IMG/VR virus record: IMGVR_UViG_3300003877_000001
Location: 186,001-250,000 of that record
Length of the DNA: 64,000 bases
Direction: 5' to 3' (one strand)
The position numbers and the translations under genes are program-made. Below, piece by piece: positions 3,841-55,215 of the stretch. Position 1 is the first letter of the stretch; each line of letters begins with the position of its first letter. Below the pieces are notes generated by a model. That model saw nothing but the letters and a program-made list of their open reading frames with translations. It did no database searches and had not been told where the DNA came from.

Positions 3841-4089
3841 ATGGAATTTTATAAAACAACTGAAAAACTTTCTGATATTGTACAACCAAGTCAAGTTGTA
3901 TATGTTCCTGAAAATGCAGAAGATAATGATGATGTATTCTCAAAGCAAGATTTTCTTGATTTATGTAAAGGTGATAAATATATTGCACAAATCGTTTTAG
4001 ACCTTTGTGAATGGCAATCGCCTTATACTGTTATTGATGAATTGATAAGAGAAGAAGAGTTTGAAGAAAATCAATTTAATTTATTTTAA
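3841..4089 (+). CDS. Hypothetical protein
   Basis: ORF with A-rich leader. Confidence 0.65.
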   Translation: MEFYKTTEKLSDIVQPSQVVYVPENAEDNDDVFSKQDFLDLCKGDKYIAQIVLDLCEWQSPYTVIDELIREEEFEENQFNLF

Positions 4090-4519: not shown

Positions 4520-4736
4520 AAATACTATTATTGAAAAATACGAAAAATCAGACCCAAAGATGGATTTTCTGTTATGGTTCACTCAAAATTACAAATCTAT
4601 CAAAGAAACACAAACTAAGGCATTAAATATAGCCGATGTTAGCAAATCGTTTACTGCGGAAGAAGTAGGAAATATGTTAGCAACAAAGTTTAGTACGATA
4701 GAAGAAGCAATACACTATTTTGATACAATAGATTAG
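4470..4736 (+). CDS. Hypothetical protein
   Basis: ORF; N-terminus MDLINKK repeated. Confidence 0.6.
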   Translation: MDLINKKMDLINKKMDLNTIIEKYEKSDPKMDFLLWFTQNYKSIKETQTKALNIADVSKSFTAEEVGNMLATKFSTIEEAIHYFDTID

Positions 4737-4795
4737 CAGTATATATTTGCTAACGTTGAGTGTAAACACAGTTTAATAACGATTAAATAAAACAG

Positions 4796-5967: not shown

Positions 5968-6014
5968 GATGTCCTAAACGTATAAGTAAAAAACAAAGAC
6001 TAAAAGAAATTATT

Positions 6015-6308
6015 ATGGAACTAAAACATATTATTGATTATCGTTCTATTCACAATATTCTGATAGAGCCAATGAATCAAAAGGAATTAGCTGACAATGT
6101 ACGTAAAGATGGTAGTGTTCAAGCTAAAGTTCTAGTATCATTTGAAAGTATTCTAGCAAATAATATTGATGACTTAAATGATGACGTATCCGAAAAGATT
6201 ACTGGCTCTATCTCAGGATTAACAGATATCAGCTATTCAGTTGCAGGTAGAACAACTAATAACGAATTAATTCTGAAAGTAACAGGAGTACCTGAACTGG
6301 AAGACTAA
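6015..6308 (+). CDS. Hypothetical protein
   Basis: ORF after promoter 5957. Confidence 0.7.
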   Translation: MELKHIIDYRSIHNILIEPMNQKELADNVRKDGSVQAKVLVSFESILANNIDDLNDDVSEKITGSISGLTDISYSVAGRTTNNELILKVTGVPELED

Positions 6309-6414
6309 CAATGTCCAGCTTGACTAGCTGGTAAAATATTTAAGAATACTTTTCTAGGGGAAGGACTAATCAATGTCCATTCGTAGTACCCTAAGAATTG
6401 TTTTTGTTTAAAAT

Positions 6415-6445
6415 CGGGGGAGAGGTGTCTCCCCCATATTTTTTT
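6415..6445 (+). terminator. Intrinsic terminator-like hairpin
   Basis: GGGGAGA-GGTG-TCTCCCC followed by T-rich tract. Confidence 0.6.
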
Positions 6446-14167: not shown

Positions 14168-14270
14168 AAAGGAACAAAACAAAGGTGTTTTTAATAAAAA
14201 TGGAACATGAAAGAACCATAAAAGTACTACTTCATTTCTACATTAGTAGTTGTTAGGTCAGGGTAATTTA

Positions 14271-14693
14271 GTTGTGATCACCTTACAAAATGTGATAATA
14301 ACCAACCTTGTGCTCACGGTGATGTTTTATTTGACTTGTTGTGATCACCTTACAAAATATGATAATAACCAACAGAGTAGGTTTTATTTTGATAAGCAAG
14401 TAAGTTGTGATCACCTTACAAAATATGATAATAACCAACATATTCCTATTGTTATTATTGTTGTGATCACCTTACAAAATGTAATAATAACCAACCTATC
14501 TTATATACCAACATCTCTTGCCGAGGTTGTGACCACCTTACAAAATATAATAATAACCAACTCCAAGAGCCAACATTCGCAACCACGTACTGTTGTGATC
14601 ACCTTACAAAATATGATAATAACCAACGAGGATGTAGAGTTGGATTATTACCGCTTAGTTGTGATCACCTTACAAAATATGATAATAACCAAC
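14271..14693 (-). CRISPR. CRISPR array: 7 x 36-nt repeats, 6 spacers (31, 30, 20, 30, 30, 30 nt)
   Basis: Plus-strand consensus GTTGTGATCACCTTACAAAATATGATAATAACCAAC starting at 14271, 14338, 14404, 14460, 14526, 14592, 14658 with unique spacers; GTTG...CAAC ends; - orientation inferred from the adjacent gene and repeat-family similarity. Confidence 0.97.
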
Positions 14694-14919
14694 ATTATTA
14701 GAGATAAATCACTAATTATGAACAATTTATATTGTGAAATAATATTATAAATTTGTAAGGTTCTACCCCATTATCATATTATCAATCCATTTTCATGTTT
14801 CTAATACTAGAAGCTATATTTTACGTGGATATCACACTACCCAATCGTTAATTTATAATATTCAATAAGTTAAAGAACTTGTTATTACACTACAAATGTA
14901 GGTAAATAAATTGTAAATA
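14694..14919 (-). ncRNA. Candidate leader / tracrRNA-like (omegaRNA-derived) region
   Basis: Contains segments complementary to the repeat at 14752-14761, 14770-14780 and 14816-14836. Confidence 0.4.
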
Positions 14920-17505: not shown

Positions 17506-17706
17506 TTATTTATTTTTTAATGTTAGTAAACCAAATACAGAAGATAGATAATAGGAAGCACCTATTACATATACAATTATTTTTAACGTATCTTGATTTC
17601 TTAATACGGTAAAGATATTTATTTTAAAGAACAGATAAATCATTACAACTATAAAAGGAATAACGATTACGTTTGTGATACTAATATATGTGATTAATTT
17701 CTTCAT
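17506..17706 (-). CDS. Small 2-TM membrane protein (paralog of 19517..19717)
   Basis: Hydrophobic segments; near-identical to 19517..19717. Confidence 0.7.
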   Translation of the reverse strand: MKKLITYISITNVIVIPFIVVMIYLFFKINIFTVLRNQDTLKIIVYVIGASYYLSSVFGLLTLKNK

Positions 17707-19516: not shown

Positions 19517-19717
19517 TTATGATTTTTTGTATATAAATAAATTAAATACAGCAGATAGATAATAGGAAGCACCAATTAAATATATAATCATTTTTAATAT
19601 TTCTTGATTTCTTAATATAGTAAAGATATTTATTTTAAAGAACAGATAAATCATTACTACTATAAAAGGAATAACGATTACGTTTGTGATACTAATAATT
19701 TTAATAAATTTTTTCAT
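19517..19717 (-). CDS. Small 2-TM membrane protein (paralog of 17506..17706)
   Basis: Near-identical to 17506..17706. Confidence 0.7.
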   Translation of the reverse strand: MKKFIKIISITNVIVIPFIVVMIYLFFKINIFTILRNQEILKMIIYLIGASYYLSAVFNLFIYKKS

Positions 19718-36947: not shown

Positions 36948-37727
36948 CTATTCTTTTAATATGAAATCTTTTGTTGTTAATTCATCAGTTCTTCTATAAC
37001 AATTTAATTCTGGAAGCCAAACCATATGATTTCCAGTTAATTTAATTATTGTTCCATCTGATAATGTAAGTTTAAACCATTTTTTCTTTCCTCTTTTTGT
37101 TATTGAATGATTCTTTATCTTTTTATAACAAATTTCGTTTTTTACAATGTTATATGATTTAACATTTAATTCTAATTTTTTTTCACAAATATCTTTAATA
37201 GTTACGTTACCAATATCAGTATTAATTATAGTCTCTTCATCTAAACAACCTTCAAGTTTTTCAGACCTATACACTAATTTTTCTTTCCATTCTGGTAATT
37301 TATCAACCAAATTTTGGATTCTTTCCTCGCCACTTTTAGTACAGAAAGTTGGAAATCTACTTTTAGCACTCATATCTTCAGGAACGGGCGGTTCATATTT
37401 ATACACACCAATAGCTTCTGTTAAATCAGTATCTAATAACAAATTTAAAGGTAACATAAGTCCCTGACTTACAGTCCCTCTCAACTTAATTGTACGGATT
37501 CTAAGGAATCCCCTATCAATATCTTTTTGATTCTTGAATAGGTGATTAGACCAATCTTTATGTGGTATCATTGAGTCTATTTCAAAATAAATTCCCCATT
37601 CCCCTTCTTGGAATTCATCCTTTTTAACGACACATTCCCATCCATCTACTGTCGCTTTTTCGATTTTATCAGCATTAGGAATTGGCGTTAATTTACTTAC
37701 TTTTCTTAATGTTACTAATTTTCTCAT
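36948..37727 (-). CDS. N-terminal part of DRB0094-family RNA ligase fused to split-intein N-half (99 aa)
   Basis: IPNADKIE...GWECVVKK...YFEIDS, LRGTVSQGL, motif I EKLEG, then intein CLDEET...LTGNH. Confidence 0.9.
   Translation of the reverse strand: MRKLVTLRKVSKLTPIPNADKIEKATVDGWECVVKKDEFQEGEWGIYFEIDSMIPHKDWSNHLFKNQKDIDRGFLRIRTIKLRGTVSQGLMLPLNLLLDTDLTEAIGVYKYEPPVPEDMSAKSRFPTFCTKSGEERIQNLVDKLPEWKEKLVYRSEKLEGCLDEETIINTDIGNVTIKDICEKKLELNVKSYNIVKNEICYKKIKNHSITKRGKKKWFKLTLSDGTIIKLTGNHMVWLPELNCYRRTDELTTKDFILKE
36951..37247 (-). mobile_element. IntN of naturally split intein
   Basis: Block A Cys1 (codon 37247-37245) and block B TxxH (TGNH). Confidence 0.9.
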
Positions 37728-37996: not shown

Positions 37997-38183
37997 TTTT
38001 TTTTATTTTAATGTCCTTTATCTATTACATTTAGTATTGTTTCTTCACCTGACACTACATTAACAACATCTTTAACAACTGCTAAAGGCGTTAGTGCTGT
38101 TTTTATTGTTGCACCCACAATACTACTAAAAAATCCCATAATTTTATTTTTTTGTAAATATACTATTATTATATTAATAATAC

Positions 38184-38283: not shown

Positions 38284-38423
38284 ATATTATTGTTTATGAT
38301 ATTGTTTATGATATTTTTATGTTTTTTTGTAAATATACTCAAATTATATTGGTAATGCTACGTAAATTTTAAAACTCAATTCTTTTTCTAACTTTTCGAG
38401 AGTTGATATGTACAACCACTACA

Positions 38424-39054: not shown

Positions 39055-39511
39055 CTACTCATCACTTACTAACCAACGTAAGTTCTGTACCAAATGTAAA
39101 GCAATAGTCATATATTGTTTAATTTTCTCTTCCTTTGGGTTATCATCTTCAATAATAGCAAGAAGAGTATCACAACCACTACAACACCCGTAATAATTAT
39201 CCGTAATTACATAATCACTTACACTTGGTTGGTAAGAGTCTTTTAGGTATTATATAAGTTGTTGTTCCTTGATCATCATCATCAATAACGGTCATTTTAC
39301 TTATGTCAAACTTTATAGTATATCCATCTTTATCTTTTAATTCTGTAATTACTAACTCAAATAACTTAACAACAATCGTTTGGTAATCACAATAATCTTC
39401 TTGCTTTGTGGTTGAGAAATACTCTTTTAACATATGCTTATTTTCATTCCATTGTTTTACAGCTTCTTTTATCATAATATCTATTTTAAATTTTCCTATT
39501 TCAAAGGGCAA
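39055..39511 (-). pseudogene. Frameshifted conserved phage gene
   Basis: ORF 39215..39511 continues in another frame (YQPSVSDY...CSGCDTL...LHLVQ) to about 39055. Confidence 0.55.
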
Positions 39512-39806
39512 GGATCAAAATTGAAATTAAATTCTTCGTTTATTTTATCATAAAAGTTTCGCAACGTTTCATATACAAATCTGTTATAGTGCAATTAAAA
39601 TTCAAGCACCAATCTTCTGCCCCATAAAGTTATTTCAATCACTTTGCTAAACCGTTTAAAAAATGGTGAGCCTTTATACTTAAAGATTCTAAAATACATA
39701 GGGTCATCGTCATCTCTACCCCAACTAACTACTAAAATTTTAAACTCTTTTGTTTTTAAATAATACATATCATTTGAATTTTAAAAGCACATAACATGGT
39801 ATATAA

Positions 39807-40194
39807 TTAATTTACTATCTTTCTCCCATCAAACACCACCAACATACTATCGTGCATACCTGCCTTGCCCTCTACATATTCGCCCTTTGTATTAACACCG
39901 CAAAACTTTATTCTCTTTTCTATAAAGCGGATCTCATTAGCGTTCGGCAATATATGTTTGTGGAATAATTGAGTGCTTGTACTTACAGGCAACAGCATCA
40001 CGCATAATTTACCTTTCTTGCTTTCTTCTATTGCCTTAATTACAAACGCTTCTTTAAGTTTTCTGCTGTAAGGTGGATTGATAAAGTTTCGCTCTTTCCA
40101 TTCTTCAATTTCAAGTCCGTCCCATTCTTCAATATTATGCTTATAATGGAGGTGTAGCCCAGTCATCTTTATGTGGTATGTTTCTATTTTTCAT
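39807..40194 (-). pseudogene. Phage N6-adenine DNA methyltransferase with internal deletion/frameshift
   Basis: MKNRNIPHKDDWATPP in one frame (ATG 40194) and FINPPYS in another; the FDPC segment is absent here but present at 39502-39555. Confidence 0.7.
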
Positions 40195-40240
40195 CTTTCG
40201 TTATTTTTGTCCGTAAATTAACTATTTATATACCTATTCG

Positions 40241-40606
40241 TTATACATCATTTAAAGAACCTCTTGTTTCCACCCAAAAAGTAACGTATTCATAATCACT
40301 TTTTTGTTTATCTTCTATTGGCAAATTATTATCTTCTCTATATTTGTAATAATCATATTTTTCTCTAATCATACGTTGTCTTTCAAGTTCCTTTTCTCTA
40401 TAAAACGCTTTTTGTTGAAAATCCATTAACCTTTTCATTCCATCACCATTGATGAACTCATCATATAGTTCTACCATTCTTTTTGATGATTTTCGTGTAA
40501 AAAAACGCTGTATAACACCACCAATAAATAATGGCTGTTTAATGCTTGATTCGGTAGTATGTGTGTTTTTATTTAGTTCTGTCATAATTTTAAATTTTAA
40601 TTTCAT
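40241..40606 (-). CDS. Hypothetical protein
   Basis: ORF; stop lies in TAAC motif. Confidence 0.6.
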   Translation of the reverse strand: MKLKFKIMTELNKNTHTTESSIKQPLFIGGVIQRFFTRKSSKRMVELYDEFINGDGMKRLMDFQQKAFYREKELERQRMIREKYDYYKYREDNNLPIEDKQKSDYEYVTFWVETRGSLNDV

Positions 40607-40631
40607 CTGTTGATATTTCCATTGTTATGCA

Positions 40632-40955
40632 TTACTGCAATCGCAACATTCTAAACCAATTCAATAAAACGTTTTTATCATTTAATGAATACCCCCATTT
40701 ACCTGTTATCAAAAAAGTAATTGGAAGTCCTACTAACATTATTACCATCATAATTATTGCCAATGGTAGAGTAAATCTTATTAAAACATTTACAGGTTCT
40801 TTTTCTTCTCTGTAAAAATCCATTCCAAGTTCAATAAATCTGTCTACCATTTCCTCGCTACTTAATTTTTTAAGTTCTGGAAACACTTTTTTTATTTGAT
40901 AGGTGTTATTAGCATATCCATTTGACCAAGTTCTTTTTATTTTTCTATATAACAT
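40632..40955 (-). CDS. Membrane protein
   Basis: One hydrophobic helix. Confidence 0.6.
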   Translation of the reverse strand: MLYRKIKRTWSNGYANNTYQIKKVFPELKKLSSEEMVDRFIELGMDFYREEKEPVNVLIRFTLPLAIIMMVIMLVGLPITFLITGKWGYSLNDKNVLLNWFRMLRLQ

Positions 40956-41097
40956 ATGTTTGTCCTAATTTATTTTTTACAAAAAGTTATTGTTCTTTTA
41001 TTTAACATTCTACAAAAATAGTTATTTTATCTAACATAAACAAATTTCAAGATAAAAATCTTTTCGTTCCATATACAAATTGTTACTAGCAATAGAA

Positions 41098-41463
41098 TTA
41101 GTAACTAGGCGTACATTTGGGGCAAGGGCAACTTAATCCGTGTACACACATTCCACCATCTCTCCTTATTCCAGTACCACAACAGTCTGTACATGCATCG
41201 TGCATACAAGGCTGCCAGTTAACTTCATATTGTCTTTGTATATTATCTAAATGTTCTTTTTGCTTCCTCTCCAAATCTTCCTCGTACTGTTTTCGGTTTA
41301 AGTTTAATGATATATAGGTTTTGTTATAATCAATAGCGGTATCTGTACTAGTCCTATCCGTTATTGTGTTAATTTTAATTTCTTCTTTTTTCATATTATT
41401 AATATTAGTGTTTTTACATTCTTTGTTTTTTACAAAACCATTGAGTAACAATAGCATCTGCAA
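41098..41463 (-). CDS. Cys-rich hypothetical protein
   Basis: CMHDACTDCCGTG...CVHGLSCPCPKC. Confidence 0.6.
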   Translation of the reverse strand: MQMLLLLNGFVKNKECKNTNINNMKKEEIKINTITDRTSTDTAIDYNKTYISLNLNRKQYEEDLERKQKEHLDNIQRQYEVNWQPCMHDACTDCCGTGIRRDGGMCVHGLSCPCPKCTPSY

Positions 41464-42193
41464 TTCCGGGAAATGTCTTACTTCTCAAACAGGCTCTTTC
41501 TTTTCCTGATAATTTTGCGGCATCAACATACCATTTAGCCATTCTTTTCCCACTTTTAAAGGTAACATATTCAGGCTCTACTATTTTAGTTGACTGTAAT
41601 TTAGAAAAGTTTTTAAGCCATAAACAAGTTTTTTTTGCGTGTGGGTCACCATATTCATACGGTTGTATTATTTGATTTGGTTTTCTTATTCTTGTGCTAA
41701 TAATACCAACAGGATTTTCTATAGCTATCTGTCGTATTGGAGCATTTAATAAGTCAGCAAAAAATTTTACTCCATCTTCTCTATCCTGTCGCCTATTAGG
41801 GAACTTTGGATGTGGTCGCCTTTCATTTGTAGGTAAATGTTTGTCGTCTGGATGAAAAAACCATTTATTTCCTGTTACTGTTAGGTAAGTGCAAGGTGGA
41901 TGAGCAATCATAGCAGTATATTTACCGCTGTATGCTTCCTTTATCGCATCGCCTTGTAGATGCCATTCTGGGTGTCCACCACTTGGTGGTAATATATCAC
42001 AAGAGTATGCCTCAAATCCTGCTCTTCTCAATGCTATTGTAATTGTTTGGCTTTCCTCACAAGCGACAAGGATTTTACCACCGCTAAAACAATAATCATT
42101 CATTTCAATTCTTTTTTTTTCTTGAACCATTTTTCTACGTGCATTTAGTATTTCACTCAATTTTCCATCTCCATCTAACCTACCACTATTCAT
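41414..42193 (-). CDS. Phage DNA cytosine methyltransferase-like protein (real start probably at MNDYCF)
   Basis: ILVACEES...AYSCDI, IAHPPCTYL (catalytic PC), IENP, KKTCLWL, RSKTFPGIA. Confidence 0.75.
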   Translation of the reverse strand: MNSGRLDGDGKLSEILNARRKMVQEKKRIEMNDYCFSGGKILVACEESQTITIALRRAGFEAYSCDILPPSGGHPEWHLQGDAIKEAYSGKYTAMIAHPPCTYLTVTGNKWFFHPDDKHLPTNERRPHPKFPNRRQDREDGVKFFADLLNAPIRQIAIENPVGIISTRIRKPNQIIQPYEYGDPHAKKTCLWLKNFSKLQSTKIVEPEYVTFKSGKRMAKWYVDAAKLSGKERACLRSKTFPGIADAIVTQWFCKKQRM

Positions 42194-52857: not shown

Positions 52858-55215
52858 TTATTTATTTTCAAGTATTTTTATTCTTCCTTCTAATTCCTTA
52901 ATAGCTTCAACCAATACTGGAACTAATTCTCTATATTCAACAGTTTTATATAAACCATCATCAAATTGTAAGTTATTATTTACAACTAATGGGAATCTCT
53001 CTTCTACTTCTTGTGCTAATAAACCATATCTTTTCTTACCAACCATAGCTTTTGGTTGCATCTTTTCATTGAATTCATATTCATAACCATTTAATGCAAT
53101 AATACCTTCTAATGGATTTTGAATAGGTTGAATAATTGTCTTCAATCTTCTATCTGAAACTGATGCTTGAGTTACTTTTTTAACTGTTCCAATTCCTGTT
53201 GAACCCGTTTCCCATGTTAATAAATCATTTGCACCACCAGCAGAAGGTGTATTCATTATTGCTAAATTACTTACTGCTGTTGTATTAACATATGTAGCAC
53301 CAGTAAGTTTAATATTATTACCACCAATAATCGTTGCACCACTATTACCAATTTCTATGTTATGATTTCTACCACCTAAGATTGCTGACCAGTTTGCTAA
53401 AGCACCATGACCAGATGTTTGAGAATTTGTATTATATGAGTGATTAAATGCACCATTACCACAAGCATAAATATAATAATTACCATCATAACCAAATCCA
53501 CCAACATGTACACCATCATTTCCTGCACAAGTATATCTACCTTCAGCATGTGATGAAGGTGCAGCAGGAGTTGTTCTTGTTTTATATCCTTCTGTATGTG
53601 AATGACTACCAAATGCATATGTTTGATTACCTTCAGCATGTGATGATGTTGATTGTGCAAAAGTTGATTCACCTTCGGTATGTGATGAAGCACCTAATGC
53701 ACATGTTTGATTACCTTCAGCATGTGAATAATTACCAACTGCTATACTAAAAAATCCTTCAGAATGTGAAGCAGTACCACATGCTTCAGATTGTCTACCT
53801 ATTGCATGTGAACCATGACCACATGCTTTAGTTAAACATCCAAATGCTTGTGAAAAATTACCTAAAGCACAAGTATCTAAACCCATGCCAACAGAATAAT
53901 CACCTTCTACAACACCCAATCTTTTACCTAATGTAAAACTTTGACTTGCTGTTATAAATGTAAATCCAGTATTTGCACCAAATAAACCAGCATTATTAAA
54001 TTGAATTTCTGTATTTGCACCTGCTGGATTCGTTGTACCACCAGTTCCACCTGATAAAGCACTTAAATCTATATTTACATCTCCAAGTCCTTCTGTTCTA
54101 GCTAATGCTAATTGAGCAGAACCGTCTAATGTACCACCAGATACAACTCCATCATTTGTATTAATTGATGCTAAATCAACCGTTACATCTGGTTGACCTT
54201 CTGATCTAGCTAACTCTAATGTGGTTACATTTAAAGTTGCACCAGATACATAAATATCTGTTGTTCCACCTGATAAAGCACTTAAATCTATATTTACATC
54301 TGGTTGACCTTCTGATCTTGCTAATGCTAATTGAGCAGAACCATCTAATGTACCACCAGATACATATATGTCTGTTGCACCTATTGATGCTTTACTAATA
54401 TATTCTATAATACCAGTTGATGTATTTCTTACTAATACTTGATCTGTTGTTGTATTATTAGTTGGTGATGTAATTAATGCTAATTTACCAACACCTGTTG
54501 TATCTATATATGATGTACCAGTTAAATCAATATTACTTCCACCAATGATTGCTGCATTAGTATTACCAACTGCTATATTATTTTGATATCCACCTACAAT
54601 AGCTGAATTATCACTTAAAGCAGTGTTGTTTTTACCTTGTGAGAATGATGCATAACCACAAGCAATTGAACTTTGACCACCAGCATGAGAATAATCACCT
54701 ATTGCAACATTTGAATTTCCTTGAGTTGATGAATATTTACCTTCAACACTAGCACTTCTATTTCCTAATGTAAAACTTTGAGTTGCTTCTACGAATGTAA
54801 AACCACTATTAGCACCTAATGTATTTCCACTACTATTATTATATTGAATTTCGGTAATATTACCAGCAGCATTTGCTTCTGTACCTGCACTAATAATAAT
54901 ATCATCACCAGATGTTGTAATACCAACACTACCTGATGGTAATAAGCGTTTAAATCTTAAAACAGTACCTAAATTATCTTTATAAATTCCAATACCAGTA
55001 CCCACATTAGTACCCGTATTTGCCTCACCACTAGCAGTAGAAGCAGATATTATAAGTTCACTTGTACCGCTTACAACTTCTATTGCACCAGCACCAACTA
55101 ATGATTTGAAATTTAATGTATTAAAGGGATTTACTGAATCGTAAATTGTAGTTCCACTACCTAAATTATTCCCTTTAAATTGTGTTGTTTGTATGTTTAT
55201 TGAAGAATTACTCAT
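52858..55215 (-). CDS. Tail fibre/spike with autotransporter-like head repeats and C-terminal intramolecular chaperone (peptidase S74)
   Basis: Repeated SHAEG-type motifs, internal duplications, SDRRLKT...YGLLAQEVEE...LVPVLVEAIKEL. Confidence 0.85.
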   Translation of the reverse strand: MSNSSINIQTTQFKGNNLGSGTTIYDSVNPFNTLNFKSLVGAGAIEVVSGTSELIISASTASGEANTGTNVGTGIGIYKDNLGTVLRFKRLLPSGSVGITTSGDDIIISAGTEANAAGNITEIQYNNSSGNTLGANSGFTFVEATQSFTLGNRSASVEGKYSSTQGNSNVAIGDYSHAGGQSSIACGYASFSQGKNNTALSDNSAIVGGYQNNIAVGNTNAAIIGGSNIDLTGTSYIDTTGVGKLALITSPTNNTTTDQVLVRNTSTGIIEYISKASIGATDIYVSGGTLDGSAQLALARSEGQPDVNIDLSALSGGTTDIYVSGATLNVTTLELARSEGQPDVTVDLASINTNDGVVSGGTLDGSAQLALARTEGLGDVNIDLSALSGGTGGTTNPAGANTEIQFNNAGLFGANTGFTFITASQSFTLGKRLGVVEGDYSVGMGLDTCALGNFSQAFGCLTKACGHGSHAIGRQSEACGTASHSEGFFSIAVGNYSHAEGNQTCALGASSHTEGESTFAQSTSSHAEGNQTYAFGSHSHTEGYKTRTTPAAPSSHAEGRYTCAGNDGVHVGGFGYDGNYYIYACGNGAFNHSYNTNSQTSGHGALANWSAILGGRNHNIEIGNSGATIIGGNNIKLTGATYVNTTAVSNLAIMNTPSAGGANDLLTWETGSTGIGTVKKVTQASVSDRRLKTIIQPIQNPLEGIIALNGYEYEFNEKMQPKAMVGKKRYGLLAQEVEERFPLVVNNNLQFDDGLYKTVEYRELVPVLVEAIKELEGRIKILENK

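What the first reader, a model, noticed from the sequence alone, without database searches (positions are those of the whole stretch)
39583..41223. Integron-cassette-like architecture (paired GTTA...TAAC boxes) in an accessory region
Seen on the - strand: segments start with a GTTA box and end with a complementary TAAC box. Examples: GTTATACA (40516) / TGTATAAC (40247-40240; 8/8, containing the ORF stop); GTTATGTGCTTTTAAAA (39795) / TTTTAATTGCACTATAAC (39600-39583); GTTAACTGGCA (41223) / TGCTAGTAAC (41091-41082). Between cassettes, TAAC-GAATAG-GTATATA (40243) pairs with TATATAC-CAT-GTTA (39805-39792) like attC L/R boxes but encloses about 450 bp including the MTase gene. Known: integron cassettes show this R'/R'' complementarity with stops in RYYYAAC, but attC sites are short (about 57-141 bp). 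Inference: a phage gene-shuffling platform with oversized attC-like sites that carry gene starts and create chimeric ORFs. No integrase is in the window.
Basis: partly seen in the sequence, partly recalled or inferred. Interest (0 to 1): 0.7.

Follow-up and report, generated by a model that had tools for sequence, protein, structure and literature searches.

The report
Relic phage gene cassettes, scrambled methylase
The GTTA/TAAC boxes are the visible tips of a real cassette-like layout: small imported phage genes, each closed by a stem between its own two ends and separated by a conserved junction element. Here they are worn relics in a 326-kb phage with no recombinase, and one of them, a DNA methylase gene, has had 53 bases cut out and pasted 590 bases downstream.

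Summary
All the boxes are at the stated coordinates. As bare GTTA..TAAC pairs they are close to chance: 11% of genome tiles hold an exact 8/8 pair. Comparison with relatives shows they belong to a longer element: ATATAC, 3-6 nt, GTTA plus 5-10 gene-specific bases before a gene, and the complementary bases plus TAAC, 5-6 nt, GTATAT after its stop. All four non-coding copies in the 326-kb genome lie in this 1.6 kb. The ORF57, Dam and probably ORF121 modules are closed by such stems. Relatives keep the stems through double changes, and similarity between phages ends exactly at the boxes. The same layout occurs in marine phage contigs and in Polaribacter phage P12002L, where such sites were published as attC-like. 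It is not an integron: the genome has no tyrosine or serine recombinase, the junction elements here have collapsed to about 25-30 nt, and stem mismatches are G.T on the sense strand (24 against 2 A.C), which points to RNA pairing. My reading is promoter/stem-loop modules shuffled as PeSLs are, carried here as relics. Separately, the Dam gene lacks 53 nt that now sit 590 nt downstream, identically in three assemblies.

The parts
41098..41394 (-). ORF98, a small Cys-rich (zinc-ribbon-like) protein of phrog_17149. No 5' box of the module type.
41044..41092 (-). Copy A of the 3' element, directly after the ORF98 stop: box ending TAAC, 5 nt, GTATATGGAACG, then TTTTTAT-CTTGAAAT.
40632..40955 (-). 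ORF107, a membrane-type small protein (phrog_36118). Homologues in L144 and L148 are bracketed by GTTAGG../..CCTAAC. Here only a TGCATAAC relic after the stop (40624-40631) remains.
40241..40606 (-). ORF121. It holds an internal GTTATACA (40509-40516) and TGTATAAC at the stop (40240-40247). An in-frame ATG lies 39 nt after the left box.
40213..40243 (-). Collapsed junction element between ORF121 and Dam: TAAC, 6 nt, GTATATA, 4 nt, then GTTAATTTAC, which is the Dam left box.
40146..40194 (-). Dam piece 1: start codon to ..DWATPP. It ends at the deletion joint between 40146 and 40145.
39807..40145 (-). Dam piece 3: YKHN..NPPY.. to the stop, PF05869 positions 55-144, in a shifted frame relative to piece 1. 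The right box GTAAATTAAT lies at 39806-39815.
39774..39806 (-). 5' element of the ORF57 module: TATATAC, CAT, then the left box GTTATGTGC followed by TTTTAAAATTCAA.
39595..39768 (-). ORF57, a 57-aa protein of unknown function. It has 11 homologue clusters, found in unrelated phage contexts.
39558..39605 (-). ORF57 right box (..TTTTAATTGCACTATAAC) followed by copy B of the 3' element (AGATTT, GTATATGAAACGTTGCGAA).
39505..39557 (-). Dam piece 2, the displaced 53 nt that encode FYDKINEEFNFNFDPCP. It is inserted into copy B of the 3' element. The core insert is 39507-39549, flanked by short matches TTTTAT and CT.
39215..39475 (-). ORF86, the next gene downstream. It is not part of the array.

Best explanation
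Window 39.5-41.1 kb (- strand) is a short array of small accessory-gene modules: ORF121, Dam and ORF57, plus relic ends after ORF98 and ORF107. They were imported into a 326-kb phage from the gene pool of Polaribacter-phage-like marine phages.

In that pool a module reads, in order: the right arm of an inter-gene stem-loop ending in TATAC, 3-4 nt, GTTR plus 5-10 module-specific bases, a short leader, the ORF, the complementary specific bases plus YAAC at or just after the stop, 5-6 nt, then the left arm (GTATA..) of the next stem-loop.

Shown: the two specific boxes of each gene are kept complementary by selection acting on the sense strand. Inferred: they pair in the transcript as a 5'-3' panhandle that also covers the translation start region and the stop codon, while the conserved junction element acts as a composite terminator/promoter-like signal. 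Inferred: modules move between phages by recombination within these conserved junction elements, as PeSL cassettes do in T4-like phages, so homology breaks exactly at GTTR and YAAC.

In this genome the elements are relics, with the hairpins collapsed and no recombinase present. The Dam module is broken by a three-breakpoint event. 53 nt (codons about 17-34, including the FDPCP motif) were removed, which shifts the frame, and the same 53 nt were inserted 590 nt downstream into the 3' element behind ORF57, at a site sharing TTTTAT and CT.
For: Composite motif: 15 hits in 326 kb (12.4 expected), but all 4 non-coding hits lie in this 1.6 kb.

ORF57 module: near-identical to L083 and L087 from TATAC-N3-GTTA to TAAC and unrelated outside. 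L082 keeps the stem through a double change and a G-C to G-T change.

Dam relatives: 14 of the closest loci carry brackets, with at least 5 different stem sequences around the same gene. Own-box pairing is 5.4 of 6 positions against 2.9 of 6 for foreign boxes.

Own 5' flank against own 3' flank, compared with shuffled partners: complementary runs of 8 or more in 37 genes against 21.6 +/- 4.6, and runs of 10 or more in 8 against 2.3 +/- 1.5, in 12 related loci. In cultured phage P12002L, 4 genes score 10 or more against 0.6 +/- 0.8.

Mismatch asymmetry in 20-22 distinct stems: G.T 24 against A.C 2 (p = 1e-5), or 14 against 0 under strict scoring.

The predicted RNA folds of the window and L082 modules close with the bracket stem; z is -1.7 for the window and -4.6 for L082.

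Inter-gene elements of 44-125 nt with the layout YAAC, spacer, hairpin, spacer, GTTR occur in L149, L082, L083, L087, L091, L148 and the Dam loci.

PeSL precedent: PMC2839356 and PMC4122927.

No recombinase in the window's genome or in P12002L.

Dam: a clean 53-nt gap against 8 intact relatives, and the missing 53 nt found at 39505-39557. Removing the 43-nt core restores the match between copies A and B of the 3' element (score 21 to 26; 0 of 2000 shuffles reach it). The arrangement is identical over 3360 nt in three assemblies from two samples and two assemblers.
Against: There are no transcript data, so RNA pairing is inferred only from the G.T bias. Folding of top-strand single-stranded DNA would give the same bias.

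Some stems in that count are related by descent, so there are fewer independent events than counted pairs.

The strict conservation of GTT/AAC at the stem base and of the inverted TATAC/GTATA next to it is not needed for a plain RNA helix. It would fit protein recognition of DNA ends.

If the TATAC..TTG part is the promoter, transcription would start inside the left box and the outer half of the stem would be missing from that transcript.

The sigma-70 promoter and terminator scans gave nothing above chance in the window.

The window's genome as a whole shows no excess of bracketed genes, so function in this phage is doubtful.

The left box of ORF121 lies in coding sequence.
Confidence: 0.5

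Rival explanations
1. These are true attC-type cassettes. The junction element (box'-YAAC, spacer, hairpin, spacer, GTTR-box) is a folded single-strand recombination site cut at G|TT by a host or phage tyrosine recombinase. The bracket complementarity is then the split R-box stem of each cassette's own site. The window holds decayed cassettes, that is, a CALIN relic.
For: The topology and size (44-125 nt) match the R''..L''..L'..R' layout. Several boxes are canonical GTTAGGC/GCCTAAC. Homology breaks exactly at TAAC|. An ORF-less bracket exists at L082 3882-3960. L082 has a Xer-like recombinase 66 nt after its array. Qi et al. predicted attC sites and CALINs in P12002L, and one of the two tested sites recombined with IntI1 (PMC9892861).
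Against: No recombinase in the window's genome or in P12002L. The L082 enzyme is below the IntI cut-offs and matches the IntI model only in two split stretches. The P12002L site of exactly this hairpin type (attC1) was the one that did not recombine. The G.T bias is on the sense strand, not the antisense strand used by attC (attC strand use is from memory). The window's junction elements lack the hairpin. No attC covariance model was available to me.
Confidence: 0.22
2. Ordinary phage mosaicism plus chance. The boxes are accidental AT-rich inverted repeats around morons and have no function.
For: Bare pairs are near chance in this genome. The genome-wide bracket test is null. One of the three example pairs is probably chance.
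Against: All non-coding copies of the composite motif cluster here. Stems are conserved with compensatory changes across phages. Own-partner pairing exceeds shuffled-partner pairing in relatives and in P12002L. The mismatch bias is strand-specific.
Confidence: 0.08
3. The modules are small non-autonomous transposons (MITE-like), whose terminal inverted repeats (TATAC-N3-GTTR..) are bound by a transposase encoded elsewhere.
For: Inverted copies of a conserved about 15-25-nt motif sit at both ends of several modules. Module borders are sharp.
Against: The inner parts of the repeats differ from module to module while staying complementary, which a shared transposase would not require. No target-site duplications were seen. 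No transposase lies nearby. The sense-strand G.T bias also argues against it.
Confidence: 0.07
4. The scrambled Dam gene is an assembly or amplification artefact.
For: The genome is assembled from a metagenome. I could not lay raw reads on it; only contigs were served, and the window's own contig was filtered out.
Against: The same 3360 nt, with both the deletion joint and the displaced piece, occur in JGI 3300003877, JGI 3300003876 and Logan's assembly of ERR2639421. The three joints share no long repeats that could mislead an assembler.
Confidence: 0.04

Closest known systems
PeSL regulatory cassettes of T4-like phages (Arbiol et al. 2010, PMC2839356; Comeau et al. 2014, PMC4122927)
   Same: A repeated inter-gene element combines a stem-loop with a promoter-like part. 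It sits upstream of small ORFans in plastic regions, and indels and replacements among relatives break at the element. G-T pairs are noted in the stems. Circles form by recombination between neighbouring copies.
   Different: The motif has a different sequence and is not sigma-70-like. Each gene has, in addition, a gene-specific 5'/3' bracket stem ending in GTTR/YAAC, which PeSLs are not described to have. No circles have been shown here. In the window the hairpins have collapsed.
Integron gene cassettes and attC sites, including CALINs reported in phages (Qi et al. 2023, PMC9892861)
   Same: GTTRRRY before the ORF and RYYYAAC after it are complementary. An imperfect palindromic site lies between co-oriented small ORFs. 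DNA methyltransferases are among the cargo. Polaribacter phage P12002L carries the same elements.
   Different: No IntI or attI. Complementarity runs 8-18 nt rather than 7. The conserved hairpin sequence is unlike attC L boxes. The wobble bias is on the sense strand. The window's sites are truncated. The hairpin-type P12002L site failed the IntI1 assay.
Morons (autonomous promoter-gene-terminator units in phage genomes; from memory, Juhala/Hendrix 2000)
   Same: Single small genes with their own flanking signals, inserted between unrelated genes and found in many unrelated phage backgrounds.
   Different: Morons have no defined conserved ends and no 5'-3' complementarity.
Long-range processing stems that enclose a whole RNA, such as the rRNA precursor stems cut by RNase III (from memory)
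   Same: Sequences before and after a gene-sized RNA pair to form a stem that brackets it.
   Different: Here the bracketed unit is a protein-coding ORF of 150-450 nt. No nuclease or cleavage has been shown.
lox/rox-type and Xer (dif, pdif-module) sites (from memory)
   Same: The half-site TATAC-N3-GTTAT resembles a loxP arm. pdif modules are genes flanked by inverted recombinase sites.
   Different: There is no 6-8-bp spacer between inverted arms and no 11-6-11 Xer layout. The inner arm sequence varies from module to module. I considered this comparison and rejected it.

Membership tests
Integron | An IntI-type tyrosine recombinase gene next to the array | tested here: not met
   PF00589 has no match in the 325,854-bp genome (CheckV 100% complete), and there is no serine recombinase. 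In relative L082 the adjacent recombinase scores 135 bits against the 265-bit cut-off of TIGR02249, in two split stretches, and its best match is a Xer-type model.
Integron | attC sites: 57-141-nt imperfect palindromes with the layout R''(RYYYAAC)-L''..L'-R'(GTTRRRY) | tested here: inconclusive
   In the window the junction elements are about 25-30 nt with no hairpin, so the feature is not met here. Relatives have elements of 44-125 nt with this layout. No attC covariance model was available. Rfam gave no hit.
Integron | The recombining structure folds from the bottom (antisense) strand | tested here: not met
   Wobble-compatible mismatches are G.T on the sense strand, 24 against 2 A.C.
Integron | Cassette borders coincide with the G|TT core, and relatives differ by whole cassettes | tested here: met
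   Similarity ends at TATAC-N3-GTTA and at TAAC for the ORF57 module, at TAAC for ORF121, and at TAAC for L148 against L091.
Integron | Excised circular cassettes | not testable with these tools
   Only assembled contigs of the source runs were served.
PeSL-type regulatory cassette | A repeated inter-gene motif made of a promoter plus a stem-loop | tested here: inconclusive
   A conserved hairpin plus the TATAC..TTG part is present in relatives. Promoter activity is unknown. The sigma-70 scan of the window was at chance level.
PeSL-type regulatory cassette | Sits in plastic regions next to ORFans and marks indel or replacement breakpoints | tested here: met
PeSL-type regulatory cassette | Many copies spread through the phage's own plastic regions | tested here: not met
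   In the window's genome the non-coding copies are confined to this 1.6 kb. The feature is met in P12002L.
Dam methyltransferase (PF05869) | An intact reading frame covering the N-terminal DWxTP..FDPCP part and the NPPY core | tested here: not met
   The match covers profile positions 55-144 only. A 53-nt deletion with frameshift is seen against 8 intact relatives. The missing piece lies at 39505-39557.

The most novel reading that the evidence does not exclude
Marine Flavobacteriia-type phages share a cassette-exchange system of their own. Every mobile gene carries a private GTTR..YAAC stem that closes on itself, flanked by a conserved hairpin site. Cassettes are cut out and re-inserted at G|TT, by a host Xer-like enzyme or by an RNA-guided or RNA-level step, using the sense strand. 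This would be a phage counterpart of the integron that needs no IntI. The window would then show what happens to such cassettes after capture by a jumbo phage, and the displaced 53-nt Dam piece would be a misfired cut-and-paste.
Probability: 0.2. Interest if true: 0.85.

Novelty: new variant of a known kind. Interest (0 to 1): 0.55.

Why it matters
How phages swap single small genes is mostly put down to illegitimate recombination. Here the module borders are defined to the base. The gene-specific stems co-vary, and they are shared by uncultured marine phages and a cultured Polaribacter phage. That makes the mechanism testable at the bench, as either RNA panhandle and processing or site-specific DNA exchange. 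It also bears on the published reading of such phage sites as integron attC sites, because the strand bias found here argues for RNA. The scrambled Dam gene is a clean natural example of a three-breakpoint cut-and-paste of 53 nt.

Tried and rejected
- Bare-pair statistics and simple words (GCA..TAAC and similar) gave no enrichment.
- The 16-mer ATTTGTATATGRAACG in IMG/VR gave 51 hits, by my own rough estimate about what chance would give. None showed extended similarity.
- Read laying on the source runs returned only contigs, with the window's own contig filtered out, so it was uninformative.
- Rfam gave no family for the window or for 7 related loci.
- The sigma-70 promoter and terminator scan was at or below the shuffle level.
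- Syntenic relatives of the jumbo phage were not found through ORF107, ORF121, ORF238, Dam or MazG. Gain or loss in a close relative could therefore not be checked.
- The adjacency of an ORF57 homologue to a tyrosine recombinase in L082 did not recur in 9 other contexts.
- Xer/dif and lox readings of the element were rejected because of wrong spacing and variable arms.
- A circular-RNA or permuted-gene rescue of Dam was rejected: the order 1-3-2 is not a circular permutation of the gene itself.
- A 10/10 GTTAGCAAAT pair at window 4753/4638 looks like chance, since its right arm lies antisense to a coding region.
- An unoriented G.T against A.C count on the junction hairpins (25 against 19) is uninformative, because each palindrome is counted on both strands.
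Full report
**Setting.** The window is bases 186001-250000 of a single 325,854-bp virus record with 27.5% G+C, rated complete by CheckV. It was assembled from a hydrothermal-vent metagenome. All genes of the finding lie on the - strand. In order they are:
- a phrog_757 DNA methyltransferase (41414-42193);
- ORF98, zinc-ribbon-like (41098-41394);
- ORF107 (40632-40955);
- ORF121 (40241-40606);
- a Dam-family methyltransferase fragment (39807-40166 as an ORF; PF05869 positions 55-144 only);
- ORF57 (39595-39768);
- ORF86;
- a MazG-like gene further on.

**The observation as written.** As bare GTTA..TAAC inverted pairs they are not convincing. An exact 8/8 pair occurs in 11% of equal-sized tiles of the genome and in 20% of Markov shuffles. 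With one gap allowed the region has 4 pairs against a tile mean of 1.37, and 5.7% of tiles reach 4. Only the 18-nt pair around ORF57 is unusual, matched in 1.6% of tiles. Related words are not enriched genome-wide. A test of every gene's own 5' flank against its own 3' flank shows no excess over shuffled partners in this genome.

**What relatives show.** None of the genes has a syntenic relative. Each one turns up in different, unrelated phage contigs, so the region is a mosaic of separately mobile small genes.
- The ORF57 module is near-identical to L083 and L087, and 73% identical to L082, from TATAC-N3-GTTATGTGC to ..GCAYnATAAC. It is unrelated outside those points.
- L082 keeps the stem through a two-sided change (GTTAT/ATAAC to GTTGT/ACAAC) and a G-C to G-T change.
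- ORF107 homologues are bracketed by GTTAGGCAAC/GTTGCCTAAC in L144 and by GTTAGGGTGC/GCACCCTAAC in L148.
- The closest Dam relatives (14 loci) carry at least five different stems around the same gene, always starting GTTR 17-58 nt before the ATG and ending YAAC 1-16 nt after the stop.
- Own boxes pair at 5.4 of 6 inner positions, foreign boxes at 2.9 of 6.
- In 12 related loci, own-partner complementary runs of 8 or more occur in 37 genes against 21.6 +/- 4.6 for shuffled partners, and runs of 10 or more in 8 against 2.3 +/- 1.5.

**The longer element.** The GTTA box is the end of a conserved motif: [A/T]TATAC, 3-6 nt, GTT[A/G]. Its reverse complement (YAAC, 5-6 nt, GTATA..) follows the stop of the preceding gene. 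Between two genes the full element therefore reads box'-YAAC, spacer, hairpin, spacer, GTTR-box. It is 44-125 nt long and often carries the loop CGTTTTAATG or the arms GTATAT/ATATAC. L148 and L091 share one whole element and its downstream gene but differ upstream, with the break at TAAC|.

In the window's genome the pattern ATATAC-N2-6-GTTA has 15 hits against 12.4 expected. All four non-coding hits are at 39571, 40228 and 41071 (reverse copies after the ORF57, ORF121 and ORF98 stops) and at 39792 (forward copy before ORF57). The Dam gene between them is itself bracketed, by GTTAATTTAC at 40213-40222 and GTAAATTAAT at 39806-39815. The window's junction elements have collapsed to about 25-30 nt and hold no hairpin.

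**The three example pairs.**
- The ORF57 pair is real.
- The ORF121 pair is 8/8 and invariant in two homologues whose similarity ends right after TAAC. Its left box, however, lies in conserved coding sequence, 39 nt before an in-frame ATG. I rate it probable.
- For the ORF98 pair, the right box is real (copy A of the 3' element). The left box lies in the conserved Cys-rich domain and needs a gap to pair, so this pairing is probably chance.

**RNA or DNA.** With symmetric scoring, 20-22 distinct stems hold 24 G.T mismatches and 2 A.C (p = 1e-5). Strict scoring gives 14 against 0. Pairing is therefore selected on the sense strand, which means RNA or top-strand single-stranded DNA. Predicted folds of the window and L082 ORF57 modules close with the bracket stem, and that stem also covers the leader just before the start codon and the last codons with the stop. 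Read by eye in the sense orientation, the junction hairpins likewise show more G.T than A.C mismatches (sequences).

**Recombinases.** The window's genome has no tyrosine or serine recombinase. L082 has a Xer-like enzyme right after its array, but it fails the IntI models. No other ORF57 context has a recombinase.

**Literature.** PeSLs of T4-like phages are composite promoter/stem-loop cassettes next to ORFans. They mediate modular shuffling by recombination and form mini-circles (PMC2839356, PMC4122927). Qi et al. 2023 (PMC9892861) reported attC clusters without an integrase in phages, including Polaribacter phage P12002L, with methyltransferases as cargo. Their P12002L_attC1 has exactly the layout found here (TAAC, 6 nt, hairpin with loop CGTTTTAATG, ATT, GTTAGGC), and it was the one site that did not recombine with IntI1. 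I fetched P12002L (L149). It carries many copies of the motif on both strands at 30.9-39.7 kb. It shows own-gene brackets above the shuffled level: 4 genes scoring 10 or more against 0.6 +/- 0.8. It has no tyrosine recombinase.

**The Dam gene.** Eight intact relatives read MKNRNIPHKDDWATPPYFYD..FDPCPYKH... The window's gene has a clean 53-nt gap at CCTCCAT|TATAAGC, which shifts the frame. Exactly those 53 nt lie at 39505-39557, behind ORF57 and copy B of the 3' element. Copies A (after ORF98) and B are two copies of a 65-75-nt element. Deleting the 43-nt core of the Dam piece from B raises their alignment score from 21 to 26, and none of 2000 shuffles reaches that score. The insertion point shares TTTTAT and CT with the donor site. 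This is a three-breakpoint swap of adjacent blocks. It is recent, since all three pieces are otherwise intact and piece 3 is up to 90% identical in protein to the closest relatives. Without the FDPCP part the enzyme is probably inactive. The same 3360 nt occur in three assemblies from two samples and two assemblers, so this is not an assembler artefact. The mechanism is unknown; capture of an excised fragment at a second break, or template switching, are my inferences.

**Verdict.** The region holds cassette-like modules whose borders are the GTTA/TAAC boxes, of a kind shared with Polaribacter-phage-like marine phages. It works more like PeSL-type regulatory cassettes with an added, co-varying 5'-3' RNA stem than like an integron, and it fails the integron membership tests that could be run. 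In this jumbo phage the elements are relics. The attC-like reading is not excluded for the donor phages and deserves a bench test.

Noticed in passing
window 36948-37727 (-): A 259-aa ORF joins a PHA02142-type RNA-ligase OB-fold domain (1-94; 3.5e-32) to an intein splicing domain (172-257; 5e-07, below the Pfam cut-off). PHROGs sees an RNA ligase followed by a helicase-type piece. It may be an intein-interrupted or split RNA ligase.
   Followed up: no
window 14268-14695 (genome 200268-200695): A cluster of at least six 36-39-nt direct repeats (97-100% identical), spaced about 66-250 nt apart.
   Followed up: no
window 17533-17686 and 19544-19697; window 54044-54145 and 54263-54364: Direct repeats of 154 nt (93%) set 2 kb apart, and of 102 nt (92%) set 219 nt apart.
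   Followed up: no
G000:C1:266462-267387 (outside the window): A tandem array with a 153-nt period, about 6 copies, 89-98% identical.
   Followed up: no
window 4638-4647 and 4744-4753 (-): A perfect 10/10 pair GTTAGCAAAT..ATTTGCTAAC, 107 nt apart, preceded by TTACAC-N5. The right arm lies antisense to a + strand ORF, so it may be chance or another relic.
   Followed up: partly
L082 4954-5784 and L082 1-4900: A 47.8-kb viral contig carries a Xer-like tyrosine recombinase directly after an array of at least 7 bracketed small ORFs, one ORF-less bracket (3882-3960) and a Mom-like gene.
   Followed up: partly
L158 about 5990-6420; L157: MazG homologues in other viral contigs are also bracketed (GTGCTGTTATCGG/CCGATAACGGCAC), so the layout extends to further cargo genes.
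   Followed up: no
window 38142-38181 and 38317-38356: A 40-nt direct repeat (83%) containing TTTTTTTGTAAATATAC, 175 nt apart in the small-ORF stretch downstream of MazG.
   Followed up: no
window 1-64000: ARAGORN finds no tRNA gene in the 64-kb window of this jumbo phage.
   Followed up: no
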